From positions 144,146 through 208,145 of IMG/VR virus record IMGVR_UViG_3300020186_000013: a DNA stretch of 64,000 bases; one strand, 5' to 3'. This document shows positions 26,419-52,355 of the stretch, piece by piece. The notes under the pieces are model-generated. The model made no database searches. It was not told where the DNA came from and saw only the letters and a program-made list of their open reading frames with translations. Position 1 is the stretch's first letter; each line of letters starts with the position of its first letter. Both the position numbers and the translations under genes were made by a program.

Positions 26419-26904
26419 TCAAAACATCACGCGGTAGCGGGGACCACGGAGGATGTAGAGGTTCTGGGGCAACGTCGCGAACGGCATGCTGATGCTGACG
26501 ACGTCGATCGTGTATCGCTTCTGCAACCACCACTGGAACCCGCGACGGAGGATCTCGTGGGCGACGGTACGCTTGGCCCGGTCCAGAGCCGACTCCCTGG
26601 CCACGAAGGAGCCGCCCGTCATCTGCGTGCGAATCGCGTCCCTGAACGTCTCCCGCAGCAAGTCCTTGTCGCCCACCAGCCGCAGGGCCGCAGCTACCTT
26701 CGGCTCTTCCCACTCGTCGAACCGGTCGGCAAGCACCATCGCCGAGAACTCCAGCTTGCCGTCCCACAGCTTAGCCAGCTCCTCGCCCACCCACGGGTCG
26801 TCGGCCCACATCGGGGCAATCGGCTGGTCGAGTACGTACCCCGCGAGAGCTGCATCAAGTGTGCGTTGCACGGCCGCGACCGTAGTCTCCACTTCGGTGC
26901 TCAT
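26419..26904 (-). CDS. Hypothetical protein with a degenerate TIGR02996-like segment
   Basis: AMVLADRFDEWEEPKVAAALR resembles the L(I/V)YADWLEExG..raefiR pattern. Confidence 0.55.
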   Translation of the reverse strand: MSTEVETTVAAVQRTLDAALAGYVLDQPIAPMWADDPWVGEELAKLWDGKLEFSAMVLADRFDEWEEPKVAAALRLVGDKDLLRETFRDAIRTQMTGGSFVARESALDRAKRTVAHEILRRGFQWWLQKRYTIDVVSISMPFATLPQNLYILRGPRYRVMF

Positions 26905-26906
26905 GG

Positions 26907-27269
26907 TCACTCCGGCTTCTTCGTGGGGTGGGGGTACGTCCGGGCGTGGATCTTGTCGGCCCAGTCGGCCGCATCCTTGCGGACATCGGGGTTGCGAGAC
27001 TTCCAGTCGCCTAGGTGCCCAATCCACAGGTGGTGAGTCGGGCACAGGGTGACGAAGTTGTCGCGTTCGAGTTCCTTGCTCGGGTCCCAGCTGACGGGCA
27101 TGACGTGGTGAACTTCGACGTTCTCGCGGTTGCCGCAGGCGGCACACCTCGGGTTGTCCTTCAACCAAGCCGCCCGGTACGACGGCCACTTGCCCGACCG
27201 GGCGACCAGCAACTCGATCTGGGGCCGCGTTGGTCCCAGGCCGACGACACGCAAGAGAAGTCCGATCAT
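26907..27269 (-). CDS. HNH endonuclease
   Basis: PRCAACG...VEVHHVMP...DNFVTLCPTHH. Confidence 0.9.
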   Translation of the reverse strand: MIGLLLRVVGLGPTRPQIELLVARSGKWPSYRAAWLKDNPRCAACGNRENVEVHHVMPVSWDPSKELERDNFVTLCPTHHLWIGHLGDWKSRNPDVRKDAADWADKIHARTYPHPTKKPE

Positions 27270-27295
27270 GGTAACCTTCCGTGGTTATCGCCCAC

Positions 27296-27667
27296 TCACC
27301 GCACGAAGATGTGCATGTAGCGGCGTCCGTCCCGTCCCAAGGCCCAGGCCGCTCCCGCAAAGCGGTAGCGGTCGTAGGTACAGCAGGCACCCCAGCCGAG
27401 GTGCGGTGGCCATGCGGCACAACCAGCGGCGGACGCCGATGTGCTGACAGGCAAGGCCGTGAAATCGTTGGCGGTGTGGCCCTGGATCAGTCGGGCGGCT
27501 CGGAAGTCGGCGATGTTCTTGGCCCCCGCCGTCAGGTTGGGGTCCTCGATAAACGGCGGGAGGCCACGTGCGGCCCGTGCGGCGTTGACCTCTGCAAGGG
27601 CGTCGTCGGCGGCGAGGCTGATCGACGCGGTCACCACGCACACGATGAGGGTAGCGATCCAACGCAT
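27296..27667 (-). CDS. Secreted CAP/SCP-like domain protein (divergent)
   Basis: Signal peptide MRWIATLIVCVVTASISLA; ALAEVNAARAARGLPPF..DPNLTAGA. Confidence 0.65.
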   Translation of the reverse strand: MRWIATLIVCVVTASISLAADDALAEVNAARAARGLPPFIEDPNLTAGAKNIADFRAARLIQGHTANDFTALPVSTSASAAGCAAWPPHLGWGACCTYDRYRFAGAAWALGRDGRRYMHIFVR

Positions 27668-27680
27668 TCTTCGTCTCCTG

Positions 27681-30208: not shown

Positions 30209-31012
30209 TCACGAACCGCCAGCCGGACGCTGCTGCGGCTGTCCCGGCTCTCCAGGGGCGTGGCAGTGGACAACGTCACCGGGCTTGAACAATTGCCAGA
30301 CGTAGCAGGGCCGCAGGCTGCCCACAAGGTACTGCTTGTACCAATCCCGCCAATGGATGCAATCGCCCTCGTGACCGGGGTACTGCAACATCGCCTCTCC
30401 CCCATTCTTCACCTTACGCTCGAACTGGGCATAGCTGCGGAGCGGGTAGTGGTGCATCTCCAATGCCGGACTCGTGACGACGTCGCCGGTAAGCCCCTCG
30501 ACGGCGTGCAACCCCTGGGCCACGTGGACGAACATCGACGGCCGGTGGATCACACGCGGGTGGTTGTCCTGGAGCACGCAGAACGGGAAGTCCTTCGGGT
30601 CGAACGGACCAACTCGGTCGGGCTCACCCTGCACGGGCTTGTGAATCCACGTCCGACCCCGGTCGAGGAAGACCGTAGACACGTTCGCGGGCACGGTCTC
30701 CAGGTAGGAGAGGTGCCCCCAGAACTCGTCGGCGTCCAGGTGCATGACCCAGTCGGGCTTGTACCTCTGGGCGATGTACTTCGCCAGCCCCGTGATCCAC
30801 TTCGACTGCTCGTAGGTGTGGTTGGGTTGATCGAACACGTCGAGGACATGGGGCCACTTCCACTGCAACTCGTCGAGCAACTCCCTGGTCCCGTCCGTGC
30901 TGCCGTTGTCCATGATGACGAAGCCGTCCACCCCGCGTTCGTGGTGGTGGCGGATATTGGCCTCGACGATCTCGACCTCGTCCCGGACGAGGAGGGTGGC
31001 GACGATCTTCAT
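30209..31012 (-). CDS. Glycosyltransferase GT2 (Glyco_tranf_2_4-like)
   Basis: VRDEVEIVEANIRHH...GVDGFVIMDNGSTDGT...DWVMHLDADEFW. Confidence 0.85.
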   Translation of the reverse strand: MKIVATLLVRDEVEIVEANIRHHHERGVDGFVIMDNGSTDGTRELLDELQWKWPHVLDVFDQPNHTYEQSKWITGLAKYIAQRYKPDWVMHLDADEFWGHLSYLETVPANVSTVFLDRGRTWIHKPVQGEPDRVGPFDPKDFPFCVLQDNHPRVIHRPSMFVHVAQGLHAVEGLTGDVVTSPALEMHHYPLRSYAQFERKVKNGGEAMLQYPGHEGDCIHWRDWYKQYLVGSLRPCYVWQLFKPGDVVHCHAPGEPGQPQQRPAGGS

Positions 31013-31341
31013 TGGTTCAGCTTGCCTTCTGGGCCGGGAGGCTTGTTGCAGTTTTCGAGTGCCGCCTTCAAAAAGTCGGCCGACGTCTTCTCGTTGTCGA
31101 CGATGCGGAACTGCTTCTTCACCTCGCAGAAGAACGCTTCGGCACTGGCCGTGTCGGACGCACCCAGGTGCATCCACTTCGCCTGCCACACCTTCCAGTC
31201 CAGAAAGAACGTGTGGATGAGAGCATGGGCCTCGAATGACGCCAATGTGAACTGCTGGTCGTGGTCGGCGTGCTTCGCCTTCGGGGGCATGTCCTTACCG
31301 GCGACCGGCGGGTACAAAGCGTACGGGTTCGTCGAACTCAC
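31009..31341 (-). CDS. Hypothetical protein (110 aa)
   Basis: Coding-like ORF coupled to both neighbours. Confidence 0.65.
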   Translation of the reverse strand: MSSTNPYALYPPVAGKDMPPKAKHADHDQQFTLASFEAHALIHTFFLDWKVWQAKWMHLGASDTASAEAFFCEVKKQFRIVDNEKTSADFLKAALENCNKPPGPEGKLNQ

Positions 31342-32243
31342 GTCGACTCCTTCGCAAGGCGTGCGACGCGGTCCCGCAGGTACTCGACCGAGTCGTGGAC
31401 GGTGAGGGTCTCCCAGCCCGGACAGCCAGGGCCGACGATCGCGGTCACCAGGAACGGATCAGACGTCATGCAGGCTCGTAGCATGAGCCGCTGCCACGGC
31501 CGGTCGTGGCTATCGAGGACGAGCTTCAGCTTGTAGTCCGGCACGGCCAGTCGCTTCTCGGCAGCACGAGCTTCGATCGCGACCTGTCGCAGGCCCTTCT
31601 TGTGCAGCTCCTTCATCCGCTCGAACGACTGCTGTTGCCGATTGGCGGGCAGACCGACGCCGAACCAGTTCTGCCGCACCTCGCCGAAGTGCGTCACGCG
31701 GAAACCGAGATCGACCCAACGGGCCTTGGGCCACTTCTCCAGGAACTCCACGTCGTAGTTGCCGGCGTGGGAGTGCCACGTGTCGAACATCGGCCAGCAC
31801 TGGCACGCCGGATCATTGGCGTTCCACATCTGGAAATACCCGTACGGCCACGGGTCGTGGTCGACAATCAGCTTGCCCTTCTCGTCATACCGGCGGGCAC
31901 CGGCGATCGTGCCGGGCTTGAAGTTCTTCTCGGCGATCTTCCGCCAGTTGGTCTGAGGCATGATGTCGGAGTCGAAGTGCAGGACGTGGGCGTGGGGGTC
32001 CATCGCGGCGTAGGCGACGTTAAGGGCGGCACCCTTGTTGAATGCGGCACCGAACTTGCCGAAGACGTCCGTGGTCACCACCCGGATTCGACGGTACTTA
32101 TTGCACACGTCGATGACGGTCTTATCCTCGGGCTTGGTCACCACCGTTAGGCTGTCGAGGGTGTCCATCCAGATCGGGAGGGACTGCCGCAGGTAGTTGG
32201 CGTAGACGGGGCCGACGCAACACGTGAAGGCATCAATTTCCAT
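31338..32243 (-). CDS. GT-A-fold glycosyltransferase
   Basis: FNKGAALNVAY...VLHFDSDIMP; PYGYFQMW; YDVEF. Confidence 0.75.
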   Translation of the reverse strand: MEIDAFTCCVGPVYANYLRQSLPIWMDTLDSLTVVTKPEDKTVIDVCNKYRRIRVVTTDVFGKFGAAFNKGAALNVAYAAMDPHAHVLHFDSDIMPQTNWRKIAEKNFKPGTIAGARRYDEKGKLIVDHDPWPYGYFQMWNANDPACQCWPMFDTWHSHAGNYDVEFLEKWPKARWVDLGFRVTHFGEVRQNWFGVGLPANRQQQSFERMKELHKKGLRQVAIEARAAEKRLAVPDYKLKLVLDSHDRPWQRLMLRACMTSDPFLVTAIVGPGCPGWETLTVHDSVEYLRDRVARLAKEST

Positions 32244-32925
32244 TGGGCTTCCTGGCAACGCAGTACAAGAAGTTTTCGTGCTCGACGACCTTCTTCATAA
32301 CGATCTTGACGTCCTCAAACCCCAACCGCGTCAGCACGTAGCGGAGGGAGTCGGCGGTGTAGAACCACAGGTGGTCGGGGTTCGTCAAGTCCGTATCGTC
32401 GGGCACGATAAGATACAGCGGACGGCCCGGTGCGAGCAACCGGTACATCTCTCGCAGGGCTCCCGGCGAGTCCGGCATATGCTCGGCGGCGTGAGCACAC
32501 AGCACCAACTGGGCCTGCCCGGTGGCTGCCGCCTCCAACTCCTCGAAGCACCGGTTCTCCATGTGCACGTGGTGGTTGTCCCGCATCCACTGAGCCGCCC
32601 ACGGGTCGGGCTCGAAGCCGACGTAGCTGTAGCCAAGCGACTTCAGGTGACTCACGTACGGGCTAACCCCCGTGCCGATCTCAACGGCCATGCCGCCGCC
32701 CGGCGGGGCGGGCGGCAGCTTACCGAGGGCACCCGTCAACTCTTCAAGGTACTTGCCCGGACAGAACGTCCCGTTGACCAGCGAACCCAAGCTCTCGTAA
32801 TACACCTGTCCCCCCGACGGGTGGTCCCGCCGGTACTGAACATGGTGGGCACACTTCTTCACCGACTTGGTCGCGTACCAAGTCGGGTCGGGAGTAGTGA
32901 CGCAGCCGCAGGGGTGCTTGGTCAT
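32233..32925 (-). CDS. Class I SAM-dependent methyltransferase with N-terminal Cys/His motif
   Basis: VEIGTGVS, YVGFEPD, LVLCAHAAEHMPDSPGALREMYRLLAPG..LYLIVPD. Confidence 0.85.
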   Translation of the reverse strand: MTKHPCGCVTTPDPTWYATKSVKKCAHHVQYRRDHPSGGQVYYESLGSLVNGTFCPGKYLEELTGALGKLPPAPPGGGMAVEIGTGVSPYVSHLKSLGYSYVGFEPDPWAAQWMRDNHHVHMENRCFEELEAAATGQAQLVLCAHAAEHMPDSPGALREMYRLLAPGRPLYLIVPDDTDLTNPDHLWFYTADSLRYVLTRLGFEDVKIVMKKVVEHENFLYCVARKPNGN

Positions 32926-33866
32926 TTGATTGCCGAGTTCTCGATGTAGTTCGTGACCAACTTCAACGTCTTCGCGGCCGGTGCCGTGTCGAGGGTGATG
33001 AGTTCCACCCGGCGGTTCTTGTCCTTGGGCTTGTAGATGCCCGCGTGGGTCTGGCTGACCTCCTCGAACTCGCCGTCGCAGGCCAGTTGCCCGAACCGTC
33101 GCAGAGGAACACCGCACCGGTGACAGTGAAACTTCACCTGCTTGGCAAACGCCTCGATGCTGGAACGCCACCACCCCTCCACGATCGGCACGCCCAGGTC
33201 GGGCCACTCAGGGTCATCGGCGTGCAACATCGCCTGGGCACCCATGATCTCGCACAGGTAACCCCGCAGGCCCCGGCCCGGCACGGCACAGATCATGGCC
33301 GACCAGTTCTGGTTGACGTCGCAGTTGGCGATCATCTCCCACCGCTTGCCCTCGTCGGGCTCGACGTCCATCATCGCCACGAACGGCGGCGAGTGCCGGG
33401 AGTCCGTGTCGTGGCCCTTGAGCTGCTTGCGACACTCCGGCCAGTCCCGGTAGAACTCGTCGTACGCAACCTGGTCCATGTGGACGTTCAGGTTGCTGAC
33501 CTCGGGGTTGAACGTGATGCGGGCAGCCTTGCCCTTCCCGAACAGCTTGTTGCACCACAGCCCGCACTGCTCCTGGGGGATGTGCTTGCGGAGGATGGTG
33601 CACAGCTCCTCGAACTTCGGGTGCATCGCCGGGTTGCCGCCGAAGATGCCCACGACCCCGAAGTAGTCCTTGAGGCTGACCACGGCCTGCTCGAACTCCT
33701 CGGTGGTGATGTAGACGTTCTTGCCGCCGAGGTTGCTCCCCTGCGTACAGCCGAAGCACTGCTTGTCGCAGGCACGGGTGATGTGGATCTGGAGGATGCC
33801 GTTACGCCAGCACTTCCGCTTCATGCTGGGCGTCACCATCTTCGCCAAGGCTTCCTGCTCGGTCAT
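32922..33866 (-). CDS. Radical SAM enzyme
   Basis: IHITRACDKQCFGC (CxxxCxxC); GIFGGNPAMHPKF; Cys-rich C-terminus (LCE...CHRCG). Confidence 0.85.
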   Translation of the reverse strand: MTEQEALAKMVTPSMKRKCWRNGILQIHITRACDKQCFGCTQGSNLGGKNVYITTEEFEQAVVSLKDYFGVVGIFGGNPAMHPKFEELCTILRKHIPQEQCGLWCNKLFGKGKAARITFNPEVSNLNVHMDQVAYDEFYRDWPECRKQLKGHDTDSRHSPPFVAMMDVEPDEGKRWEMIANCDVNQNWSAMICAVPGRGLRGYLCEIMGAQAMLHADDPEWPDLGVPIVEGWWRSSIEAFAKQVKFHCHRCGVPLRRFGQLACDGEFEEVSQTHAGIYKPKDKNRRVELITLDTAPAAKTLKLVTNYIENSAIK

Positions 33867-33885
33867 GTCTCACTCCGTTGAGGGT

Positions 33886-34500
33886 TCAGTAATCCGCCGT
33901 CGGTCGAACGTACGACGGCGGCGGGTCGGCGGACTTTGGGTAGAACAGCTTATCCTGTTCGTGCATGACCCGGAAGACCGCTCGGATGGCGTCGACCGGG
34001 ACGCCGTCGTACACCATCACGATCGCCACCCGTCGGGACACCCGGCGGTACTCGGCGTACGACCGCGTGTCGTTGTACAGCACGCACGTCAGCGGCACGT
34101 GCTTCCAGTACCGGGTCTGCTCCAGGTAAGGCTTGAACGTCGCCGAGGCCCACCGGAACACGAAGGTCGACTTCTCGTCGTAGCACTTCTTCTCGACGTT
34201 GTACCACAGGGCGTCGATGTAGGGGAAGTCCGCGAACTCCGCGTCGACCAGGGCCTCGGCCGTCAGCCACCGCCTCCCGTTGAGCCGGTTGATGACGCAG
34301 ACCGCCCGCATCCGCACCTCGGCGTCCTCGCTAGTCGCCGCCGCGTGCTTGAGCTTGGCGACCACCGCCTCGCCCCGGTACATCAGGTCGGCCGTCGCCC
34401 GCTCGCGGACGCGGTACTCCTTGTCGCCCAGTTCGACAATCAGGCGGTCGACAGGGTCTACGTGGATGGCCAGCACTACGGCCAAGATGAAACCGATCAT
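33886..34500 (-). CDS. Signal-peptide protein with a planctomycete-type HEAT-like repeat
   Basis: MIGFILAVVLA; LIVELGDKEYRVRERATADL...SEDAEVRMRA. Confidence 0.65.
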   Translation of the reverse strand: MIGFILAVVLAIHVDPVDRLIVELGDKEYRVRERATADLMYRGEAVVAKLKHAAATSEDAEVRMRAVCVINRLNGRRWLTAEALVDAEFADFPYIDALWYNVEKKCYDEKSTFVFRWASATFKPYLEQTRYWKHVPLTCVLYNDTRSYAEYRRVSRRVAIVMVYDGVPVDAIRAVFRVMHEQDKLFYPKSADPPPSYVRPTADY

Positions 34501-34513
34501 TGGCGGTCCTCCG

Positions 34514-34981
34514 TTACACACCTTTCACTCCCCGAGGATGCAGTATGCGGTGCACCCGCTTGAGCTGTTTAACCATCTTCGGGATCTCGTGTTGCTCTAG
34601 GGTGACCCGTCCTTGCGTCACACTACTGGTGTAAGTCACAGCCCAATCAGCCCGTGGCATACTCTTGTTCGGGACCGTACCGTCGTACAGCGTTGCCAGC
34701 AGCTTGTCGATGAACGCGGCGATGGCTTGACCACTACCGTCACCCACAGTGAAGCGGACCCACGCAGAATCGCGTTCTCGGTCCCAACCAGGAAACCTCT
34801 CGCCTTTCTTCGGTCTGAGCATTTCCGCCATGGTCGGTGTTCGCGTGCCCTGACAGGAGTAGAGAGTGGCGACCTCTGGGAACAACAACAGAGCTTTAAC
34901 CAGAGGGGCAATCAACACGTCGACAGGGGATCGTACGGTGACCAGGATAGTCGGGTGTTCTTTCTTCACAACGACTCGCAT
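34514..34981 (-). CDS. Hypothetical phage protein (VD..IAPLV..L...V.TLYSCQG motif)
   Basis: Coding-like ORF. Confidence 0.6.
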   Translation of the reverse strand: MRVVVKKEHPTILVTVRSPVDVLIAPLVKALLLFPEVATLYSCQGTRTPTMAEMLRPKKGERFPGWDRERDSAWVRFTVGDGSGQAIAAFIDKLLATLYDGTVPNKSMPRADWAVTYTSSVTQGRVTLEQHEIPKMVKQLKRVHRILHPRGVKGV

Positions 34982-34990
34982 GGTGTGGTC

Positions 34991-35782
34991 TCAGGAGATT
35001 GGTCCGCCGTTGCGGACGATGATCTTCGGGTCTGCCTTCGTCTGCTCCAGGAGCTTCCTGTTCTGGGGGATGCGATTGATCTGCATCTGGCACTTCGGGT
35101 GGTCCATGTGGTAGACCGTCGGGTCGGTGAGCACCCGGTAGCGGACGCCCGCCCGGAAGCACCGCAGGCCGAACTCCTGGTCCTCGGCACCCGAGCCAAG
35201 CATCTCCTCCCACATGCCGCCGACGGACTTGGCGATTGCAGTGGGTAAACCCAGGTGGCACGTCCACAGGTAGCCCTGGATCTCCCACTTGTTATCCCGC
35301 ACCAGCTCGGCCATCCGCCGCTGGTGCTTGGCCTCGTGCCGCTGCTCGGGCCGAGCCGGGACCAACCGCTTGATGTCGGCCAGGTGCCGGTCGGTGAGCT
35401 GCTTGACAACTTCGAGGGCCACGAACCGACGGAAGCCAATGACGCCACCGTTGCCCCCGACGGTCGCGTGGCGGGCCACCAGGTCAGCCGGGCACAGGCA
35501 ATCGTCGTCGACGATAAGCAGGCGAGGTGCCTCGGAGTGCTTGATGCCGACATTGCGGGTCGCGGCGGCTCCGCACGGCTGGTGGCCGGGCTCGCGAGTC
35601 CAGTGGTGCTGGATGCGGAGCCGGTTCTTGAAGCGTTCGACGAGTTCAATCGTACTTGTGTCGCCGCCGTCGTTTACCACATGAACCTGGAAGTCCTTCT
35701 CCGACTGGAGGGCTAGGCTCTTGAGAGTCTTCTCCAGATAGAAGTTCTTCTTGTGCGTCGCGATGACCACGGAGACCTTCAT
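34991..35782 (-). CDS. Glycosyltransferase GT2 with GT7C-like C-terminus
   Basis: VSVVIATH...LALQSEKDFQVHVVNDGG...AAATRNVGIK...LLIVDDDCL; GAEDQEFGLR. Confidence 0.9.
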   Translation of the reverse strand: MKVSVVIATHKKNFYLEKTLKSLALQSEKDFQVHVVNDGGDTSTIELVERFKNRLRIQHHWTREPGHQPCGAAATRNVGIKHSEAPRLLIVDDDCLCPADLVARHATVGGNGGVIGFRRFVALEVVKQLTDRHLADIKRLVPARPEQRHEAKHQRRMAELVRDNKWEIQGYLWTCHLGLPTAIAKSVGGMWEEMLGSGAEDQEFGLRCFRAGVRYRVLTDPTVYHMDHPKCQMQINRIPQNRKLLEQTKADPKIIVRNGGPIS

Positions 35783-35957
35783 AGCCGACCTTCTTGTAGC
35801 CCAACGCCTTGGCGACGTTGAGGACGTCGATGAACGACGGGAACCGCACCTTCTTCTCGACCATGAAGCGTCGCACCGCCTGCATGAACTCGATCTCGTC
35901 GGGCGTGTACTCCGAGCCGACGGAGGTCTTGCTCAGCCCGTGGTTGGCGTCCGCCAT
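35646..35957 (-). CDS. Small planctomycete-like conserved protein (Y..DE.EFM.A......RFPS..DVL......GY); the 3' tail overlaps the next gene
   Basis: EYTPDEIEFMQAVRRFMVEKKVRFPSFIDVLNVAKALGYKKV; family recalled from planctomycete genomes, not searched. Confidence 0.55.
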   Translation of the reverse strand: MADANHGLSKTSVGSEYTPDEIEFMQAVRRFMVEKKVRFPSFIDVLNVAKALGYKKVGYEGLRGHRDAQEELLSGEDSQEPSPPVGEGLPGSCGKRRRRHKYD

Positions 35958-36517
35958 CACGCCCTCCAGCGAGTGACCCCGCCAGCCGTGTGCGTGAACG
36001 TCGAGGTGACCCCGCTGGCCAACTGCATCGACGACGGCGGCTGCCCAAAGACGACGCACCAGTAGATCCACCCCTTGGCCGACACGGCAACCCCAAATCC
36101 AACATTCCAGTAGGCGGGGTTGAGAATGTTGTTGCGGTGCGGCGGTGAACCGATCCAGTCCCGGAACACGGACGCGGGCGTCGTCTGCCCGGCGGCGATG
36201 TTCTCGCCGCACGAGCGGTACAGGTAGCCCGCCGTTGCAATGCGGTCGCTGACCACCGGCTCGCCCGGCAACTGGTGCGACATGCGGTCGGCCTTGGCCA
36301 TCGCGTCAGCGTGGACCTGGGCTGCCGTGCACAGCTTGCCGTTGAGCAACAGGATCGAGACGCGGCGTTCCGCCCGGTAGTCGTTGTGGAGAATGAGCAG
36401 CTTCGCCGCCGTCTCGTTGGCCGAGGGCGGTTGAGTCGGCCACGGGTTGGTGTTGGGAGGCAGTGGCTCGGGTCGCTTGCCGAAGAGAACCCAGGCAAAC
36501 CACTCACGCCACGTCAT
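35957..36517 (-). CDS. CAP (SCP/YkwD) domain protein
   Basis: HNDYRA...LCTAAQVHADAM...MSH...GENIAAGQ...WIGSPPHRNNILN...VGFG. Confidence 0.9.
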   Translation of the reverse strand: MTWREWFAWVLFGKRPEPLPPNTNPWPTQPPSANETAAKLLILHNDYRAERRVSILLLNGKLCTAAQVHADAMAKADRMSHQLPGEPVVSDRIATAGYLYRSCGENIAAGQTTPASVFRDWIGSPPHRNNILNPAYWNVGFGVAVSAKGWIYWCVVFGQPPSSMQLASGVTSTFTHTAGGVTRWRA

Positions 36518-36551
36518 GCTGTTGTCCACGTTCGCCTCCTTGCGAGTTAGA

Positions 36552-36902: not shown

Positions 36903-36940
36903 GTCAACTCCTTATGGGAACCAGAGTCACGGCCAGCTCC

Positions 36941-41656: not shown

Positions 41657-44600
41657 TTAGGAGTGGCCCTCGCCCGTCAGACCCTGAGCGGCTTGACGGG
41701 CTTTGTTAGTCTGGTGATGGAGTTCATCGCGTGCGGGTGCTTGACCGCCAGTGAGCTTGTTCCAAGCGTCGGAGATGGCTCCGGGGTTCTGCTGGATGCG
41801 GGGATAAGCCGCCAAGCCCGCACCACCCGCCATTATCAGCGGGTTACCAGTCAGCATCCCGAGCCCGCCGAGACCCATACCGCCCAACGCCATTCCCCGC
41901 TGCCCGCCCGTCATGTTCTCGGTGTCGTACCCCAGAGCTTTCAAGAACGGGTTACCGACGTTACCCACCCGCTGGCCGATCTGGTACCGGATCTCCTGGG
42001 TCGGGTCGAACTGGCCCTCCTCGTTGAGGAAGCCACGCTCGTGCATGTACTTGTCCGCGTCCCGTGCTATGTTCGCCTGCAACGTCGGGTAGTCCTGCTC
42101 GATGAAGGTCTTCTTCAGGTCGTTGATCTTGTTGTCGACGTCGCCGGCGACCTGGTCATGCAGAGAACCATAGGCCGTTCCGCCCAAAGCAGCAGCCCCC
42201 GTCCCGAGCGTCAACCCCTGCCCCGCCCGGAAGCCGAGCTTCCTGGCCCCGGACAAACCGGCGGCACCGCTCTGGTATGCACCTTTGCCCCACAGGAAGT
42301 GCCCGGCACGACTAAACGGGTCCATGACGCCCTGACCCATCCGCGTCATCGCGTTCGACGGAGCCTCCAGGGCGGTCGTGACACCCCGACTCAGCATGCT
42401 AGGTTCCACGGGCGTCGTCCCCGCCGCTCGTGCCGCTGCGTTCGTCCGAACCAAAGACGAGTTGCGTGCAGCAGCGACGTTGCCCCCCAGGCCAGTCATC
42501 AAACCGGCTCGACTCAGGCGACGGCTCCACTTCTCAGGGTCGTTCGGGTCACCGTTACCTGTCATGTCGCCGAGCTGGTCCATGCCGAACCCGATATTGG
42601 TCCCGGCAAACGACTGAGCCAACGGACGCCACAGCGTCTGACCCGTCGCCGAGTTGCGGAATCCTCGGTTGCCCATCAACGCACCGCCGGCAATGCCCAG
42701 CGGATTGATCCTCCAACTTCGCCAGCCGCCCTCGGGTTGGCCAGTGGCCGGGTCAATCCCCGGACTACCAAGGGTGAAACTACCCTCCCCGCCGCCCATC
42801 GCGTTGGCCGTCATGTTGCCTTGCAAGCCACCGAAGGTCATCTGCATGCCACTACCGGACATGTTCGCCCGCGTTCGACCGGCGGCAGTCGCCGCACGGG
42901 GGAGCGTGGCAGCCTCGGTGATGTTGAGACCCGAGTTGTCTTTACCGTGTGTTGCCGGACGCGGAGACACGATCTTCGGACCCATACCCGGCGTCGGAGC
43001 ACCCCGTGTGCCGGTCCGCATCAAGGGCTTGGTCGACGACGCACCAGGACGGACCAGTCCGCCCAGCCACTTCGCACCCGACACCAGGGTCTCCTTGCTG
43101 GGCCAGACGGCGTCCTTCTCGAACGCCTGCTTCTGCCCGAACATGCTGCCTAGGCCCTGGGCCATCTGCTGCCCGCCCATCATCGACCAACCCGACGGGG
43201 CGTACTGCGACGCCAGCTGCTGAGCCGACCCGGCAGCCTGCTCATTGGCCACCTCGGACGTTGCCTTCATCGACTTCGGACCGGTGATGGACATCGGCGG
43301 CGGGGCCAGCGACGCCGCCCCGGTATTCTTGTTGACGCTGACCTCACCCATCCCCTGCGGGTGTGTCGCCTGAGCCACCTGGGTCTTCTGACTCACCTGA
43401 TTCTTGCCCGTCGGCAGCGTACCGGGGGACGGAGCGGTCGGTGCGGTCTTGGGCTTCTCCTGCTTGCCGCCCACCATCTTGTCGAAGCTGTCGAGGAACG
43501 CGAGCTTCTTGAGGCCGGCAGCAAGCTCAGCGTGCACCTGAAGGCCGTAGTTGGTCCCGACCCGGTCCACGGCGGACTTGATCTGCGACAGACCGAGGCC
43601 CTTCTGACGACAGTGGTCAAAGAACGACTCGGCGAACGGCGTCATGTCCATGCCGCCTTTGTCGAACCCAGGTAGTCGCGGCCCGGTGTACGGGACCGGA
43701 GGAACAGGTTGTTGCTGCCCGAAGTTGGCAGGCAGACGCGACCCGGTGTACGGGACCGGAGGAACAGGTTGTTGCTGCCCGAAGTTGGCAGGCAGACGCG
43801 ACCCGGTATACGCCGGCACAACGTGCTGTGGCACCGGCTTAGCCTGGGGCATCGGCTGGGCCTGCGGTTGTGGCTGGGCCTGCGGTTGTGGCTGCTGGGC
43901 GGCGTTGGTGACCGGTGCCGCTAACTGCGGAGCAATGTTGCCGACGACGCCAGCCGTTTCAGATGGAGGGGCTTGCGTGGGATCGGCCAGAGCGTTCTGA
44001 ATTTGGCTAGAAAGTTGCCCGCCCAGGGTGAACTTGTTGACGTATCCGAGCCCACGGTATAAGGGGTACTTCTCTTCGTTCTGCTGAGCGTTGTACGCGG
44101 CATTGCCGATCGCGTACGGCAATTTGTTGCTCACATCATCAATGTTGGTCGGGTTCGACTTCGCCAGGGCCATCGCCCCACCAGCCCCCAAAAGTCCAGC
44201 ACCGGTAACACCCGCAGCCTGGGTCACTCCACCCATGGTCTTGTCGAAGCCCTTGAGACCATACCCGACAGCCTGTTGCCCTCGACCGAGAACGGCCCGC
44301 CCGCCACCCTGAGCCACGTTCGCGGCACCACGGGTAAGCATGCTGTTCTGGATCGGCTGAGTGAACGGCCGAGTCAGGGGCGTCGACAGGGTGTTCTTTA
44401 CGGTCTTGACGGCCTGCACAAGCGGGTGAGCCAAGCGGTTGGTGTCGAGAGCGTGGACGCCTCGGCTCAACATCGACACACCAGGGACGCCATCCATCAT
44501 GCCCGGCAACTGGTGGGTCTGGGCCAACTGCTCCTTGGTCGCCCCCGCCGCAACCCGAGACTGCATATCGGCCCGGTTCATGAGAGGCTTGACAGTCCGG

Positions 44601-46924
44601 GAGTCGAACAGCTTGGTGCCTTGGAGCTTGCCGCCCTGGCCGTAGCCGCCCATGGTCTTGGCAAACCCGGCTGCCCCGCGTCCCATTAAGCCGCCAACAC
44701 CACGAACAAGGGCACCAAAGTACGCTCGTTTCTCAAGGTCCTTCCGCTGACAGTGGTCGAAGAACGCTTTAGCGGCTGGAGTCATATCACTTCCCCCCTT
44801 GGCGAGTCCCGGCACTGTCGGCACGTGTGGTCGGATGAACCCAGGAACTTCCTGTCGGGCCGCGTCCTGTTGCTGTTGAAGCCGCTGCACCGCCCCTTGG
44901 CGAGCGTCGTCGATCGCCTTGTTGCCTGCTTGCTGCACGGAGTCGGCAGTCTCGTTGCCTACCTGTCGAGCGGAATTGGCCCACGCCTGCCCGCTCGTCG
45001 TGCGACCTAGCATTTGGTTGATGATCACCTGCTTGGCCACGGACTGCTTGGCCGCTTCTTGTTGCTGCCGAATACGCTGCATCGCTTCCTGCCGAGCAGT
45101 GTCGAGAGCCTCGCCACCCGCCTGCTGTGCGGACGAGGCCAGCGTCTGTACGCTCTTCTGAGCTATCCTCCCCTGTTCCTGGGCCATCAGCCGAGACGCC
45201 TCCTGGGCCGACATCCCTCCGCTCACCCTCTGAGCCCACGCCTTCGCAGCCGGGTGCGACATAGCCCCAGCAGCTTCCGGCGACTCGGCCACAGCCTTGA
45301 GGTTGAATTTCGGCTGAGCCGCAGCCAAACGAGGGTACAGGTTGGCTGCGGCGGTCATCTTGGCCGCGTCTTGCGGCGACTTCCAGGTCGACCAATTCAG
45401 CATGTCGGACACGGCGGGCACGTCGAGGGCACCCTGCACCCTGTTGCTTTTCATCGCAGCAGCCACCAGCGGCTCAGCCCTGGCGGCGTTGTTGTCCCCG
45501 ATCGCGTTGCCGAGGTGCGTGCGAACCGAGCGGTTCTGGAGCTCCTGCAACGCCTCGGGCGGGTAGTATTCGTGGCCGGTCCTCGTCGGCAGGCCGTGCT
45601 CATGGAACTGATTCTTCGAGAACGTCTGCGATCGGGCGATCGGGCTAACAGCCCGGAGCAGCCGCTGGCCCGTCGGGCTGTTGACGTTGGCCTCATAGTT
45701 CTGCTGGAGGGCTGGCAGCCGCTTGCGGACTTCCTCCTCCATGATCTGCTCGGTCGGGGCCGGCGTATAGTCGGCAAGGTTGCGGATCACCCCCTGCATG
45801 ATGTTGCCGCCCGCCGTGAAGTTGCCGATCCGCTTCATCACGTTGTTGACCGGGTTCTCGTTCGCCTGCACCATGCTGTTGTGGGCGGCGTTGCCGACGG
45901 TATACGGGAAGTTCCGCTTCCCCGCAGCCCGACCAACCTCGGCAATGTCGGACTTGTCCGTCAAGCTGTCCCATATCGCGGGGAGCGGATTGTCCCGTAA
46001 CTTGGCAATCTCGCCGTTCGGGTCCACCGTGTTGTACGGGTCAACGGCTCTCGTGAACCTCTGGAGGTTGTTAGCCGGGGCGTGCCACAAGGCATTCACC
46101 CCGCTGCCGAGGGCCACGCCCGCACCACCGAAGCCGACGATCTTGGTCGCAGCCCCGAGAGCCTTGTCGGCCCCCATGAGACCGTACCCGCCCGCCTGCT
46201 GTGCCCGACCCAGGATCGCCTTGCCTCCACCCTGGGCCACGTTCGTAGCACCACGGGCGAGCAGATTGTTCTGGATCGGGGTCGTGAGTGGGCGAGTTAA
46301 GGGCGTACCCAGCAGGTTCTTGGTCACGTTGGCCGCGTGCATGAACGGGTGCGTGAACCGGTTGCGGTCGAGGTAATTGAGAGCCTTGTTGGTCACCCCA
46401 ACACCAGGGATGCGGGACCAATTGCCTGGTAGCTCATGGGTCGCAGCGAGTTGCTCGCGAGTCTGCCCCGCCGCCAAGCGGGCGTTCATCCCCGGTCGAC
46501 GCAGGAACGGCTTCACCGTCGTCGAGTTGAACATGGTCTCGCCACGGAGGTTGCCCCCCTGACCAAAACCAGCGAGGTCCCGCACGTACGCCTTGCCGCC
46601 GTGGACCTGGGCGTCGCCCACGGCCTTCGCACCCGACCGGGCCACCTGGTTGACCTTGTCCGCCGCCTGGAAGGGTGCCTTCACCACGGCCTTGGTGCCC
46701 TGCCCGAACATCCGGGCCGCAGGACGGCCAATGCCGTTGAACAGGCCCACAGCACCACGGCCAAGGGCACCGAAGACGGCCTCCTTCTCCAGCCCCTCAT
46801 TCAGCTCGGCGTACACCTGCTCGCCGAAACGAAGGCCCACGCCGTCAACAGCCTCTTTGATCTGTTGCGGCGTGAGTCCCTTGTCACGGCAGCGGGCGAA
46901 GAATGCCTCGGCAAACGGCGTCAT
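41657..46924 (-). CDS. 1756-aa modular Gly/Ala/Gln-rich K-x-A polyprotein (putative virion internal/ejection protein)
   Basis: GAGG SD before ATG 46924; three MTP-leader modules; internal duplication of ~200 aa; many GxxxG helices. Confidence 0.75.
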   Translation of the reverse strand: MTPFAEAFFARCRDKGLTPQQIKEAVDGVGLRFGEQVYAELNEGLEKEAVFGALGRGAVGLFNGIGRPAARMFGQGTKAVVKAPFQAADKVNQVARSGAKAVGDAQVHGGKAYVRDLAGFGQGGNLRGETMFNSTTVKPFLRRPGMNARLAAGQTREQLAATHELPGNWSRIPGVGVTNKALNYLDRNRFTHPFMHAANVTKNLLGTPLTRPLTTPIQNNLLARGATNVAQGGGKAILGRAQQAGGYGLMGADKALGAATKIVGFGGAGVALGSGVNALWHAPANNLQRFTRAVDPYNTVDPNGEIAKLRDNPLPAIWDSLTDKSDIAEVGRAAGKRNFPYTVGNAAHNSMVQANENPVNNVMKRIGNFTAGGNIMQGVIRNLADYTPAPTEQIMEEEVRKRLPALQQNYEANVNSPTGQRLLRAVSPIARSQTFSKNQFHEHGLPTRTGHEYYPPEALQELQNRSVRTHLGNAIGDNNAARAEPLVAAAMKSNRVQGALDVPAVSDMLNWSTWKSPQDAAKMTAAANLYPRLAAAQPKFNLKAVAESPEAAGAMSHPAAKAWAQRVSGGMSAQEASRLMAQEQGRIAQKSVQTLASSAQQAGGEALDTARQEAMQRIRQQQEAAKQSVAKQVIINQMLGRTTSGQAWANSARQVGNETADSVQQAGNKAIDDARQGAVQRLQQQQDAARQEVPGFIRPHVPTVPGLAKGGSDMTPAAKAFFDHCQRKDLEKRAYFGALVRGVGGLMGRGAAGFAKTMGGYGQGGKLQGTKLFDSRTVKPLMNRADMQSRVAAGATKEQLAQTHQLPGMMDGVPGVSMLSRGVHALDTNRLAHPLVQAVKTVKNTLSTPLTRPFTQPIQNSMLTRGAANVAQGGGRAVLGRGQQAVGYGLKGFDKTMGGVTQAAGVTGAGLLGAGGAMALAKSNPTNIDDVSNKLPYAIGNAAYNAQQNEEKYPLYRGLGYVNKFTLGGQLSSQIQNALADPTQAPPSETAGVVGNIAPQLAAPVTNAAQQPQPQAQPQPQAQPMPQAKPVPQHVVPAYTGSRLPANFGQQQPVPPVPYTGSRLPANFGQQQPVPPVPYTGPRLPGFDKGGMDMTPFAESFFDHCRQKGLGLSQIKSAVDRVGTNYGLQVHAELAAGLKKLAFLDSFDKMVGGKQEKPKTAPTAPSPGTLPTGKNQVSQKTQVAQATHPQGMGEVSVNKNTGAASLAPPPMSITGPKSMKATSEVANEQAAGSAQQLASQYAPSGWSMMGGQQMAQGLGSMFGQKQAFEKDAVWPSKETLVSGAKWLGGLVRPGASSTKPLMRTGTRGAPTPGMGPKIVSPRPATHGKDNSGLNITEAATLPRAATAAGRTRANMSGSGMQMTFGGLQGNMTANAMGGGEGSFTLGSPGIDPATGQPEGGWRSWRINPLGIAGGALMGNRGFRNSATGQTLWRPLAQSFAGTNIGFGMDQLGDMTGNGDPNDPEKWSRRLSRAGLMTGLGGNVAAARNSSLVRTNAAARAAGTTPVEPSMLSRGVTTALEAPSNAMTRMGQGVMDPFSRAGHFLWGKGAYQSGAAGLSGARKLGFRAGQGLTLGTGAAALGGTAYGSLHDQVAGDVDNKINDLKKTFIEQDYPTLQANIARDADKYMHERGFLNEEGQFDPTQEIRYQIGQRVGNVGNPFLKALGYDTENMTGGQRGMALGGMGLGGLGMLTGNPLIMAGGAGLAAYPRIQQNPGAISDAWNKLTGGQAPARDELHHQTNKARQAAQGLTGEGHS
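43682..43812. repeat. In-frame 60-bp tandem repeat (two identical copies plus a partial) encoding YTGSRLPANFGQQQPVPPVP
   Basis: Lines 43681 and 43741 are identical after their first base. Confidence 0.95.
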
Positions 46925-50707: not shown

Positions 50708-50709
50708 GG

Positions 50710-50913
50710 TCATTTCTTGTTGGCTAACAGTGGGATGTCGGTGACTAGCTTCTTACCGCAGAACATGCAGTACCTGACGGGGATGGACTTCTCCTGCCCC
50801 ATGTGCCACCCTGGCGTCTTCACGTCCTTGTCATTCCGGCACGGGACCAACCAGATGATGTGGTGCTTGACGTCGGGGCAGCAGGTCGGGTGGTCGAATC
50901 GGTCGGGGGTCAT
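50710..50913 (-). CDS. Small Cys-rich hypothetical protein
   Basis: TCC...YCMFCG; TAATG coupling. Confidence 0.65.
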   Translation of the reverse strand: MTPDRFDHPTCCPDVKHHIIWLVPCRNDKDVKTPGWHMGQEKSIPVRYCMFCGKKLVTDIPLLANKK

Positions 50914-51098
50914 TACTTGCGGTCCTCCTCGTTGAGAATGGCGAAGCCGACTGTCTCGTACGCAAAGATCGACAGCGGGAAGTGCTCCCGCTTCACGTAC
51001 ATGGTAGTCTCCGTGAGCGTGGTGACCGGTCACGGGGACAAGTCCAGCTCGTCGATCGGGTGCGTGTCGTGCATCGCCTGCGAATAGTTGTAGTTCAC
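50913..51098 (-). pseudogene. 62-codon frame with an in-frame TGA at codon 23 (pseudogene, readthrough, or two mini-ORFs)
   Basis: VNYNYSQAMHDTHPIDELDLSP*PVTTLTETTMYVKREHFPLSIFAYETVGFAILNEEDRK*; coupled to both neighbours. Confidence 0.45.
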
Positions 51099-51316
51099 TC
51101 TTTGCGGTACTCCTCGGTCTTGCCCGCCGCCATGCAGTCGAAGTACCGGGAGCAATTACCCAGGAACTTCTCCTTGGGTAGCAGCTTGGGGTCGTACGGG
51201 ATGCCTAAGAGTACACCGATCTCGCGGTACACGTCCAGCCAGCAGACGTCGTCGAACTCCTGGGCCAGCATCTTGCGGCACGCGGCCTCAAGGGCTTGGT
51301 GGTCAACAGTCATCAT
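51095..51316 (-). CDS. Small hypothetical protein
   Basis: AAGGAG SD; coding-like. Confidence 0.7.
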   Translation of the reverse strand: MMTVDHQALEAACRKMLAQEFDDVCWLDVYREIGVLLGIPYDPKLLPKEKFLGNCSRYFDCMAAGKTEEYRKE

Positions 51317-51326
51317 GGACTCCTTG

Positions 51327-52355
51327 TTAGCCGAGTCGCTTGGTGGGCGACTCCTCTTTGATGATTAACGTCATCTCCCGCACGGATAAGAGCATCGACA
51401 CGCCACACTCGACCCTGGTTACAACCTGAGTAATGATAGGGTGCCGTCGACTCACGTCGTCGAACAGGTCTTCCAGCACGCCCATCGCCACGGTGCCGTA
51501 CAGGCTCTTGTTGGCACACCTGACGGCCGCGTTGACGCAAGTCGGAATGACGGCGTCCCGCTCGTACCCCCAACCGTACTCCGACGTGAACGGGGTCAGG
51601 GTGACACGGGCTCGCGTCAGCTCGTCGATGCCGGCCAGGTGCAGGGCGAACTCTTCAGCCGTCGTTAGCGTGTCCTTGATCAACCCCGCTGAGTGTGCAA
51701 AGGTCTGACTGAACACCGCATCGACCAGCTCGTGAACGATATCTCGGGGCGGCAACCGGTCACTACTGATGCAGTCTTGAAACTGCTTACGCTGCTCCGG
51801 CGACAACTTGATAACGTCCGGCAGCCTGTTCATGATCGTTATCGCCGAGCGGACCAAGCTGGCCAAAAACTGCGGACTACGGATGGTGATGAGCCGGCGA
51901 GTAGGCAGAGCGGACTTGTACCTCTCCGGGTCGTATACCCAACTCAGCCTCCGGACCATCTCGATGACGAACAGCCGCTTGACCCACTCGGGTTTAACGT
52001 CCGCCAGCTCGTTGTCGATGATCTGGAGAGGATCATCGAGGTCGTTCAGCTCGGCACCGGTGCTACGACGTTGCTCGGAGTCCATGACCCATTCCCGCAC
52101 CTCGACGGCCTTGTCCCCGCCGTCGAGGTCCAACGACCGGAGCCGGCGGCGGGCCTTCGCCCACCACCTGACCCGAGCCTCGGCGTGGAACCGGCTCTGT
52201 TCGGCCAGGAGGTCGGCGTACACCAGCAGGGGCGTGTCGTCGTCGGGGCTGTCACGCACGGCCTGCCGCATGCCGATCTCGGTGTCGGTGCGGATGAATC
52301 CGTCGGCCAGCATGCCCTGACGCTTCATGCCGGACTTCTTGTCGTACGTGTTCAT
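51327..52355 (-). CDS. TIGR02996-like domain protein
   Basis: AVRDSPDDDTPLLVYADLLAEQ matches the Gemmata-type TIGR02996 pattern P.DD..RL.YADWL.E. Confidence 0.7.
   Translation of the reverse strand: MNTYDKKSGMKRQGMLADGFIRTDTEIGMRQAVRDSPDDDTPLLVYADLLAEQSRFHAEARVRWWAKARRRLRSLDLDGGDKAVEVREWVMDSEQRRSTGAELNDLDDPLQIIDNELADVKPEWVKRLFVIEMVRRLSWVYDPERYKSALPTRRLITIRSPQFLASLVRSAITIMNRLPDVIKLSPEQRKQFQDCISSDRLPPRDIVHELVDAVFSQTFAHSAGLIKDTLTTAEEFALHLAGIDELTRARVTLTPFTSEYGWGYERDAVIPTCVNAAVRCANKSLYGTVAMGVLEDLFDDVSRRHPIITQVVTRVECGVSMLLSVREMTLIIKEESPTKRLG

What the first reader, a model, noticed from the sequence alone, without database searches (positions are those of the whole stretch)
26419..52355. Multiple planctomycete-type genes point to a Gemmata-like host
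Seen: a TIGR02996-like motif (51327; degenerate copy in 26419), a HEAT-like LGD.EYRVRERAT..L...DAEVR.RA repeat with a signal peptide (33886), a small EFM.A...RFPS..DVL...GY protein (35646-35957), two CAP proteins, and high GC. Established: TIGR02996 was defined from a Gemmata obscuriglobus paralog expansion and also occurs in myxobacteria. Inference: a jumbo phage of Planctomycetota, a phylum whose phages are poorly characterised.
Basis: partly seen in the sequence, partly recalled or inferred. Interest (0 to 1): 0.6.

Follow-up and report, generated by a model that had tools for sequence, protein, structure and literature searches.

The report
Jumbo phage with planctomycete-type genes
The window is the last 64 kb of a roughly 208-215 kb uncultivated phage from microbial mats, and several of its genes have relatives almost only in Planctomycetia, so the host is very probably a planctomycete of the Gemmataceae or Isosphaeraceae, although no direct host link was found.

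Summary

- **What the DNA is:** the window is G000:C1:144146-208145 of a 208,145-bp IMG/VR virus record. It is 62.5% GC, rated 93% complete by CheckV, and nearly all genes lie on the minus strand.
- **TIGR02996:** the protein at 51327-52355 has a TIGR02996 domain over the curated cut-off. The "degenerate copy" at 26419 is not supported.
- **Small protein (35646-35957):** its 58-residue core is genuinely coding. Relatives occur in 93/101 Gemmataceae, 78/81 Isosphaeraceae, 35/201 evenly sampled Planctomycetota and 0/151 Myxococcota genomes.
- **HEAT-like module (33886-34500):** it matches 65/101 Gemmataceae, 27/81 Isosphaeraceae and 0/151 Myxococcota genomes.
- **TIGR02996 prevalence:** 89/101 Gemmataceae, 16/81 Isosphaeraceae, 5/201 Planctomycetota and 5/201 Myxococcota genomes. 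One Armatimonadota MAG also has a single weak copy.
- **Other genes:** CAP, CsrA and GroES lean towards planctomycetes but are not diagnostic.
- **What failed to resolve anything:** the GroES tree, tetranucleotide usage, the tRNAs and a prophage search.

Myxococcota is effectively refuted as the host. "Gemmata-like" is favoured over Isosphaeraceae but is not established. I rate this a new member of a known kind, of moderate interest.

The parts
51327..52355 (-). 342-aa protein with an N-terminal TIGR02996 domain (aa 29-56 = window 52188-52271). The rest is an orphan.
   Evidence: NCBIfam E 7.7e-8, 32 bits > 29.05; 34.8 bits, single copy in the genome. No Pfam family. No full-length relative among 5.8 billion proteins apart from itself.
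33886..34500 (-). 204-aa protein: N-terminal hydrophobic anchor or signal, then a HEAT-like helix pair (about aa 11-80, window 34261-34470), then a C-terminal part with no relatives found.
   Evidence: Translation. HEAT_2 E 0.0078, below cut-off. The module matches 65/101 Gemmataceae (best E 3.7e-9), 27/81 Isosphaeraceae and 0/151 Myxococcota genomes; it gives one weak hit in Novipirellula and none in 4 genomes of other phyla.
35646..35957 (-). Small protein. The conserved 58-aa core is 35783-35957. The 45-codon tail overlaps the GT2 gene start by 137 nt in another frame.
   Evidence: GC3 0.98 in the core. Relatives in 93/101 Gemmataceae, 78/81 Isosphaeraceae, 35/201 Planctomycetota and 0/151 Myxococcota genomes, and in 0/5 genomes of other phyla. 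Alignment A2 has 11 invariant columns. No Pfam family. AF2 model of two helices, core pLDDT about 91. No indel in independent assemblies.
35957..36529 (-). CAP (cysteine-rich secretory protein family) domain protein.
   Evidence: PF00188 E 1.8e-19. 39-41% identity to Gemmataceae and Isosphaeraceae copies, against 30% to Sorangium.
27296..27667 (-). Possible second CAP-like protein (weak).
   Evidence: PF00188 E 0.0059, 17.9 bits, below the 21.1 cut-off.
26419..26904 (-). 161-aa protein of unknown function.
   Evidence: No NCBIfam hit. No similarity to the TIGR02996 region of the protein at 51327-52355. Gene limits from codon statistics.
25275..25652 (-). GroES (Cpn10) with a 28-aa N-terminal extension.
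   Evidence: PF00166 E 2.5e-23. The six hits that carry an organism name are all Planctomycetota, Gemmatales or Gemmataceae, at 50-54% identity. The tree is unresolved.
10444..10638 (+). CsrA.
   Evidence: PF02599 E 2.2e-24. 56-65% identity to the 3-10 CsrA paralogues of four planctomycete genomes; none found in Sorangium.
23920..24738 (-).
   Evidence: PF00156 at 24-25 bits, below the 26.3 cut-off.
21932..22081 (-). tRNA-Arg(TCT) and tRNA-Met(CAT).
   Evidence: ARAGORN. About 80% identity to tRNAs of planctomycete and Sorangium genomes alike.
30209..35782 (-). Glycan and modification cassette around the planctomycete-type genes: GT2 (30209-31012), methyltransferase (32233-32925), radical SAM (32922-33866), GT2 (34991-35782). 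A further methyltransferase lies at 37746-38306.
   Evidence: Pfam.
38306..39424 (-). DUF2460 tail protein.
   Evidence: PF09343 E 1.2e-7. 50% identity to huge phage LR756511 and 46% to IMGVR_UViG_3300028840_008153. 0/101 Gemmataceae genomes.
41657..46924 (-). 1755-aa protein upstream of the tail genes. It looks like a tape measure by size and position only.
   Evidence: ORF and codon statistics. No family found. The role is an inference.

Best explanation
The region is part of the genome of a large, uncultivated tailed phage from microbial mats, about 208-215 kb. Its host is most likely a member of class Planctomycetia: Gemmataceae is the likelier family, and Isosphaeraceae is not excluded.

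Shown:
- Between tail genes and a glycosyltransferase/methyltransferase cassette, the phage carries genes whose only detectable cellular relatives are planctomycete families.
- These are a copy of a small two-helix protein that is nearly universal in Gemmataceae and Isosphaeraceae, a membrane-anchored or secreted protein with the HEAT-like N-terminal module that heads many large Gemmataceae proteins, and a protein with the TIGR02996 domain that is expanded in Gemmataceae.
- It also carries CAP, CsrA and GroES genes nearest to planctomycete versions.

Inferred:
- These genes were captured from, or co-evolved with, a planctomycete host.
- They act during infection as accessory genes: a regulator or mimic of the host small protein, CsrA for post-transcriptional control, GroES for folding, and envelope-directed CAP, HEAT-like and glycan-modifying proteins.
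- None of these roles was tested.
For: - **Virus record:** 208,145 bp and 93% complete. A 215,452-bp contig carries the same small protein at 100% identity.
- **Habitat:** seven public runs labelled microbial mat metagenome hold at least 88% of the sampled words of window 30001-40000.
- **Small protein core:** 93/101 Gemmataceae genomes (best 52% identity, E 5.5e-10); 78/81 Isosphaeraceae (best 49%, E 4.7e-12); 35/201 evenly drawn Planctomycetota; 0/151 Myxococcota; 0/5 genomes of five other phyla.
- **HEAT-like module:** 65/101, 27/81 and 0/151 in the same three groups.
- **TIGR02996 over cut-off:** 89/101 Gemmataceae, often 10 to more than 60 copies each; 16/81 Isosphaeraceae; 5/201 Planctomycetota; 5/201 Myxococcota.
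- **GroES:** the six hits that carry an organism name are all planctomycetes.
- **CAP:** 39-41% identity to planctomycete copies against 30% to Sorangium.
- **CsrA:** 56-65% identity in four planctomycete genomes and no hit in Sorangium.
- **Atlas, searched without regard to phylum:** the nearest clusters for both unexplained proteins are 'commonest Planctomycetota', as leads only.
Against: - There is no direct link. No CRISPR spacer search was possible, and a tail-protein search found no related prophage in 101 Gemmataceae genomes.
- The GroES maximum-likelihood tree puts the phage on a long branch joined to an unresolved backbone.
- tRNAs are about 80% identical to planctomycete and myxobacterial ones alike.
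- Tetranucleotide correlation peaks at 0.75-0.79 in both families.
- The phage's TIGR02996 match is weak at 32-35 bits. A similar single copy occurs in an Armatimonadota MAG and a sub-threshold one in the 42% GC huge phage LR756511.
- The closest relatives of the small protein (61% and 54%) sit on short contigs that look phage-like or mobile. The gene may therefore travel among phages rather than come straight from the host.
- Only Myxococcota and five single genomes of other phyla served as negative controls.
Confidence: 0.78

Rival explanations
1. The host is an Isosphaeraceae member, for example an Isosphaera-like mat organism, rather than a Gemmataceae member.
For: The small protein matches 78/81 Isosphaeraceae genomes, generally with better E-values than in Gemmataceae: best 4.7e-12 against 5.5e-10. 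The best genome-contig GroES hit and the best CAP hit are Isosphaeraceae. Sampled Isosphaeraceae regions have GC 0.58-0.70, which brackets the phage's 0.625. The source is microbial mat.
Against: TIGR02996 occurs in 20% of Isosphaeraceae genomes against 88% of Gemmataceae, with far lower copy numbers. The HEAT-like module occurs in 33% against 64%, with weaker matches. The three highest tetranucleotide correlations are Gemmataceae genomes, though only by a small margin.
Confidence: 0.3
2. The host is a myxobacterium; TIGR02996 also occurs there.
For: TIGR02996 is over the cut-off in 5/201 Myxococcota genomes, two of them with expansions of 22 and 9 copies. Myxococcota are high in GC.
Against: The small protein was found in 0/151 and the HEAT-like module in 0/151 Myxococcota genomes. 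Sorangium has no CsrA hit. CAP is only 30% identical. The phage's TIGR02996 region aligns better to Gemmataceae copies (E 6e-6) than to the two expanded myxobacterial genomes (E 4e-4 and 3e-3).
Confidence: 0.03
3. The host belongs to another phylum that was not sampled, for example Verrucomicrobiota or another PVC lineage. On this reading the planctomycete-type genes reached the phage through phage-to-phage exchange.
For: The closest small-protein relatives lie on contigs that look phage-like. The related tail gene occurs in a 42% GC huge phage of unknown host. Controls outside Planctomycetota and Myxococcota were only five genomes.
Against: Several unrelated genes point the same way. Searches made without regard to phylum (the names of the GroES hits; the Atlas clusters) also return Planctomycetota.
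Confidence: 0.12
4. The DNA is not a phage but a planctomycete plasmid or genomic island.
For: It holds many cellular-type genes: glycosyltransferases, CsrA, GroES, a TubZ/RepX-like tubulin, and an RNA polymerase beta'-like gene.
Against: It is an IMG/VR virus record with a CheckV estimate of 93%. It has a DUF2460 tail protein, a gp6-like baseplate wedge, helicases and an SbcC-like nuclease. Nearly all genes lie on one strand. It shares genes with two other virus records. The tail gene was not found in 101 Gemmataceae genomes.
Confidence: 0.04

Closest known systems
Putative 'Gemmata phage BHS' (MF098554, 26,950-bp hot-spring metavirome contig; PMC5707555)
   Same: An uncultivated phage sequence assigned to a Gemmata-like host only from the planctomycete affinity of its genes. 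That paper states that no isolated Gemmata phage was available.
   Different: It is a 27-kb fragment, against a genome of about 208 kb here. The two were not compared directly: an 8-kb blastn of the window against the phage collection found only a short match to a Curtobacterium phage.
Huge phage LR756511.1 = SR-VP_PHAGE_COMPLETE_CIR-CU-CL_42_23 (595,163 bp; Al-Shayeb et al. 2020, PMC7162821)
   Same: Its DUF2460 tail protein is 50% identical over 72% of the length, and three further genes are shared within 40 kb. It has a sub-threshold TIGR02996-like hit.
   Different: Its GC is about 41-42% against 62.5%. It is about three times larger. It has no small-protein homologue. The paper's gene-taxonomy profile is mostly unknown: Proteobacteria 4%, Planctomycetes 2%.
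IMGVR_UViG_3300028840_008153 (163,142 bp)
   Same: Its GC is similar (60.5% in the 20 kb read). At least seven genes are shared at 25-46% identity within those 20 kb.
   Different: It is a distant relative. Neither TIGR02996 nor the small protein was found in it. IMG/VR classes it as a provirus, 78% complete.
TIGR02996 (rpt_mate_G_obs) domain proteins of Gemmataceae
   Same: The same short N-terminal domain, over the curated cut-off.
   Different: The phage copy scores 32-35 bits against 60-90 bits in Gemmataceae, and covers profile positions 5-32 of 45. No relative was found for the rest of the protein.

Membership tests
TIGR02996 domain-containing protein | HMM score at or above the curated cut-off (29.05 bits) | tested here: met
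   32 bits and 34.8 bits for 51327-52355. No hit for 26419-26904.
TIGR02996 domain-containing protein | The domain is followed by repeat modules (its name, from my own recollection, is 'repeat-companion domain') | tested here: not met
   No Pfam family in the remaining 286 residues and no full-length relative. The recalled definition itself was not checked.
Jumbo phage (genome of 200 kb or more) | Viral genome of at least 200 kb | tested here: met
   A 208,145-bp virus record, 93% complete, and a 215,452-bp contig of the same phage.
Jumbo phage (genome of 200 kb or more) | Virion hallmark genes (major capsid, portal, terminase) | tested here: inconclusive
   Found: a DUF2460 tail protein and a gp6-like baseplate wedge. 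Among the roughly 40 proteins scanned with PHROGs or Pfam, none was recognised as capsid, portal or terminase. Most of the genome was not scanned.
Phage of Planctomycetota (host assignment) | Genes shared specifically with the host lineage | tested here: met
   The small protein, the HEAT-like module and TIGR02996 show planctomycete-restricted or enriched prevalence.
Phage of Planctomycetota (host assignment) | CRISPR spacer of the host matching the phage | not testable with these tools
   No spacer database is on hand. blastn of 20 kb against 5 genomes gave only GroES, tRNA and short matches.
Phage of Planctomycetota (host assignment) | Related prophage in host genomes | tested here: not met
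   The DUF2460 tail protein was found in 0/101 Gemmataceae genomes at E <= 1e-5. Isosphaeraceae were not searched with it.
Phage of Planctomycetota (host assignment) | Oligonucleotide usage closest to the host lineage | tested here: inconclusive
   Top tetranucleotide correlations are 0.75-0.79 in both Gemmataceae and Isosphaeraceae, 0.58 for Sorangium and 0.37 for the second myxobacterium. Medians are 0.52 and 0.56 for the two planctomycete families.
HEAT repeat (PF13646) | Score at or above Pfam's gathering threshold (27.7 bits) | tested here: not met
   16.9 bits, E 0.0078. A Gemmataceae protein with the same module reaches 21.2 bits. The module is HEAT-like, not a certified member.
CAP / SCP (PF00188) | Score at or above the gathering threshold (21.1 bits) | tested here: met
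   71.2 bits for 35957-36529. Only 17.9 bits for 27296-27667, which does not meet it.

The most novel reading that the evidence does not exclude
This would be a jumbo phage of Planctomycetia, which I recall as a lineage that divides without FtsZ. On this reading it brings its own TubZ/RepX-like tubulin and an RNA polymerase beta'-like subunit, and carries a trimmed copy of a small two-helix protein that is nearly universal in Gemmataceae and Isosphaeraceae and has no described family. The phage copy, and closer copies on other contigs that look phage-like, would then be a recurrent phage-borne mimic or antagonist of an unstudied core planctomycete regulator.
Probability: 0.2. Interest if true: 0.65.

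Novelty: new member of a known kind. Interest (0 to 1): 0.42.

Why it matters
A 2017 paper reported that no Gemmata phage had been isolated, and a literature search here turned up few reports of planctomycete phages. A nearly complete genome of about 210 kb with a well-argued planctomycete host gives three things.

- A concrete target for isolation attempts and for spacer or linkage studies in mat communities.
- A catalogue of accessory genes: CsrA, GroES, CAP, a large glycan-modification set, and a tubulin.
- A pointer to an uncharacterised small protein family that is close to universal in two planctomycete families and has been picked up by phages.

The work also shows that a single weak TIGR02996 hit is not a reliable host marker by itself.

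Tried and rejected
- **Full-length relatives of the TIGR02996 protein:** only the protein itself was found.
- **Word-index search with the 103-aa small ORF:** nothing, not even the protein itself. The search admits only proteins of 0.55-1.75 times the query length, so a longer gene call on record could have been missed.
- **GroES as a single query against genome contigs:** no relative.
- **GroES tree from 80 named genomes:** the phage and its 73% relative P0007 sit on a branch of 1.46 changes per column attached to an unresolved backbone, so there is no placement.
- **CsrA against 1.84 billion representatives:** two-domain CsrA proteins top the list. The best single-domain hits (65-74% identity) carry no organism names. 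One hit looked up lies on unnamed cellular metagenome contigs.
- **tRNA and 20-kb blastn against five genomes:** not discriminating.
- **Tetranucleotide correlation with 50 genomes:** not discriminating between the two families.
- **Prophage search with the tail protein:** 0/101 Gemmataceae genomes.
- **PHROGs on the proteins at 52434-62965:** only a glycosyltransferase was recognised.
- **Fold search of the small-protein model:** no match at E <= 0.001. The weak top rows are helix-loop-helix pieces of histone-fold proteins at E above 1, which I do not count as evidence.
- **Relation to nucleus-forming phiKZ-like phages:** I considered this because of the tubulin and the RNA polymerase gene. 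The polymerase gene is nearest to Salmonella phage Arash and to cellular beta', and the tubulin has no match in the phage collection. I did not pursue it.

Full report
**What the DNA is**

The window is G000:C1:144146-208145, the last 64 kb of a single 208,145-bp IMG/VR virus record. The record is linear and CheckV rates it 93% complete. GC is 62.5% and even along the window.

A codon-usage gene caller of my own gives about 236 genes, nearly all on the minus strand. Two tRNAs, Arg-TCT and Met, lie at 21932-22081.

Eleven public runs hold at least part of window 30001-40000. Ten are labelled microbial mat metagenome, and seven of those hold at least 88% of its sampled words. A 215,452-bp metagenome contig carries the same small protein at 100% identity. 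The phage collection holds no close DNA relative.

- **TIGR02996:** the 342-aa protein at 51327-52355 has a TIGR02996 domain at aa 29-56. It scores E 7.7e-8 and 32 bits against a cut-off of 29.05, and 34.8 bits in the six-frame search. It is the only copy in the genome. The rest of the protein has no Pfam family and no relative among 5.8 billion proteins.
- **The claimed second copy at 26419:** not supported. No hit appears even at E <= 1, and there is no pairwise similarity. The ORF given (26419-27420) is over-extended: the coding part is 26419-26904, and an HNH endonuclease gene fills 26907-27269.
- **The protein at 33886-34500:** it begins with a hydrophobic stretch followed by the quoted helix pair. 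HEAT_2 stays below threshold.
- **The small ORF at 35646-35957:** it is truly coding in its first 58 codons (GC3 0.98, GC2 0.34). Its 45-codon tail overlaps the GT2 gene start in another frame. Contigs from three other samples show the same sequence with three substitutions and no indel.
- **CAP proteins:** one is solid (35957-36529) and one is weak (27296-27667).
- **Genes named for checking:** CsrA (10444-10638) and GroES (25275-25652) are clear. "PyrE" is a sub-threshold phosphoribosyltransferase-like gene at 23920-24738.

**How far the marker genes are lineage-specific**

The genome-contig scan with a GroES alignment gave me named genomes and so handles: a Gemmataceae MAG, a Fimbriiglobus, an Isosphaeraceae MAG, Sorangium and Novipirellula. 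From these I sampled whole families and phyla in six frames.

| Marker | Gemmataceae | Isosphaeraceae | Planctomycetota (even sample) | Myxococcota |
|---|---|---|---|---|
| TIGR02996 over cut-off | 89/101, often 10 to more than 60 copies | 16/81, mostly 1-5 copies | 5/201 | 5/201, two with expansions of 22 and 9 |
| Small-protein core, E <= 1e-3 | 93/101 (best 52% identity, E 5.5e-10) | 78/81 (best 49%, E 4.7e-12; generally stronger) | 35/201 | 0/151 |
| HEAT-like module, E <= 1e-4 | 65/101, several copies per genome (best E 3.7e-9) | 27/81 (best E 9e-7) | not tested | 0/151 |

- **TIGR02996 controls:** none of the 14 control genomes has a match over the cut-off. Among five genomes of other phyla, an Armatimonadota MAG has one copy at 30.3 bits.
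- **Small-protein controls:** it was found in 0/5 genomes of five other phyla.
- **HEAT-like module:** in most matches whose position I checked it sits at the N-terminus of proteins of 400-1100 residues. It gave no hit in four genomes of other phyla and one weak hit in Novipirellula.
- **Host versions of the small protein:** they carry an Arg-rich N-terminal part, and then the same conserved core ending in a GY(R/K)K motif.
- **Family status of the small protein:** it has no Pfam model.

**Genes that support the host call less specifically**

- **GroES:** the word-index search returned 123 GroES proteins. The six that carry an organism name are all Planctomycetota, Gemmatales or Gemmataceae, at 50-54% identity.
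- **CAP:** 41% and 39% identical to Isosphaeraceae and Gemmataceae copies, against 30% in Sorangium.
- **CsrA:** 56-65% identical to the 3-10 paralogues found in each of four planctomycete genomes. No hit in Sorangium.
- **Atlas:** it covers all phyla, and for both unexplained proteins it lists nearest clusters whose commonest phylum is Planctomycetota. Scores are below 0.9, so these are leads only.

**What did not help**

- The GroES maximum-likelihood tree leaves the phage on a long branch at an unresolved backbone.
- The tRNAs are about 80% identical to several phyla.
- Tetranucleotide correlations peak at 0.75-0.79 in both planctomycete families.
- The tail protein has no relative in 101 Gemmataceae genomes.
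- The CsrA representative search gave unnamed hits.

**Conclusion on the host**

Three unrelated genes have planctomycete-restricted or strongly enriched relatives, and four more lean the same way. Two of the markers were not found in any of 151 myxobacterial genomes.

I put the probability of a Planctomycetia host at about 0.8. Within that class, TIGR02996 and the HEAT-like module favour Gemmataceae, and the small protein slightly favours Isosphaeraceae. "Gemmata-like" is therefore the likelier reading (about 0.45-0.5 overall) but is not shown.

All of this is gene-sharing evidence. No spacer, integration site or physical link was obtained. The closest relatives of the small protein (61% and 54%) lie on short contigs that look phage-like or mobile, so part of the signal may pass between phages of the same host range.

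**How it probably works (inference)**

These genes look like accessory genes used during infection.

- The trimmed small protein is modelled as two helices with a core pLDDT of about 91. It may mimic or compete with the host's own near-universal copy.
- CsrA and GroES would reshape translation and folding.
- The anchored HEAT-like protein, the CAP protein and the surrounding glycosyltransferases, methyltransferases, radical SAM enzyme and sulfotransferase would act on the envelope or on glycans.

None of this was tested.

**Relation to what is known**

- A 27-kb "Gemmata phage BHS" contig was assigned its host in the same indirect way. That paper notes that no Gemmata phage had been isolated.
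- The tail protein links this phage distantly to the 595-kb huge phage LR756511, which has about 42% GC and an unknown host.
- It is also linked to a 163-kb IMG/VR record of similar GC.

I rate this a new member of a known kind: an uncultivated jumbo phage with a gene-content host prediction.

Noticed in passing
window 56280-57695 (-): A 471-aa protein has a Tubulin/FtsZ GTPase domain (PF00091, E 5.1e-11, over the cut-off). Its nearest solved relative is the TubZ-like plasmid protein RepX (4ei7, E 1.8e-10). It has no match in 50,697 phage records.
   Followed up: partly
G000:C1:140507-142255 (L166:16507-18255, -), outside the window: An RNA polymerase beta/beta'-like protein (phrog_25354, E 6.5e-57). 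The best phage match is Salmonella phage Arash at 31%, and it also matches cellular beta'. It is not phiKZ-like.
   Followed up: partly
window 15874-20017, 30209-38306, 57728-59466: An unusually large glycan and modification gene set for a phage: at least five or six glycosyltransferases (GT2 and GT4), a sulfotransferase (18014-18823), two methyltransferases and a radical SAM enzyme.
   Followed up: no
window 35646-35782: The small planctomycete-type ORF runs 137 nt into the GT2 gene in another frame. Its tail looks like off-frame sequence, and three independent assemblies show no indel there. Why there is no earlier stop is unexplained.
   Followed up: partly
L169 (Ga0335069_10337640) and L170 (Ga0070733_10046895): The closest relatives of the small protein (61% and 54% identity) lie on short metagenome contigs beside ORFs that look phage-like. 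Like the phage copy, they lack the Arg-rich N-terminal part of the host proteins.
   Followed up: partly
window 5959-8286, 8852-10372, 10635-11186: A class II (B12-type) ribonucleotide reductase with an ATP cone, a NUDIX plus AAA-kinase-like fusion, and a 2H phosphoesterase lie next to the CsrA gene.
   Followed up: no
LR756511.1 (L098; W01:C1:192748-192852): The 595-kb huge phage shares the DUF2460 tail protein at 50% identity and three other genes. It has a sub-threshold TIGR02996-like hit (23.2 bits) although its GC is about 42%.
   Followed up: partly
G588 (Armatimonadota MAG, C188:23303-23404): A single TIGR02996 match at 30.3 bits outside Planctomycetota and Myxococcota. Lone weak copies of this domain are therefore not lineage-diagnostic.
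   Followed up: no
(CsrA): Two-domain (tandem) CsrA proteins top the global search with the phage CsrA. The four planctomycete genomes searched hold 3-10 CsrA paralogues each.
   Followed up: no
window 36552-36902 and 26907-27269: A DUF6527 protein and an HNH endonuclease lie among the planctomycete-type genes.
   Followed up: no
L168 (Ga0163151_10000037, 215,452 bp): A contig about 7 kb longer than the record studied here carries the same small protein at 100% identity and a GroES at 99%. It may hold the missing end of the genome.
   Followed up: no
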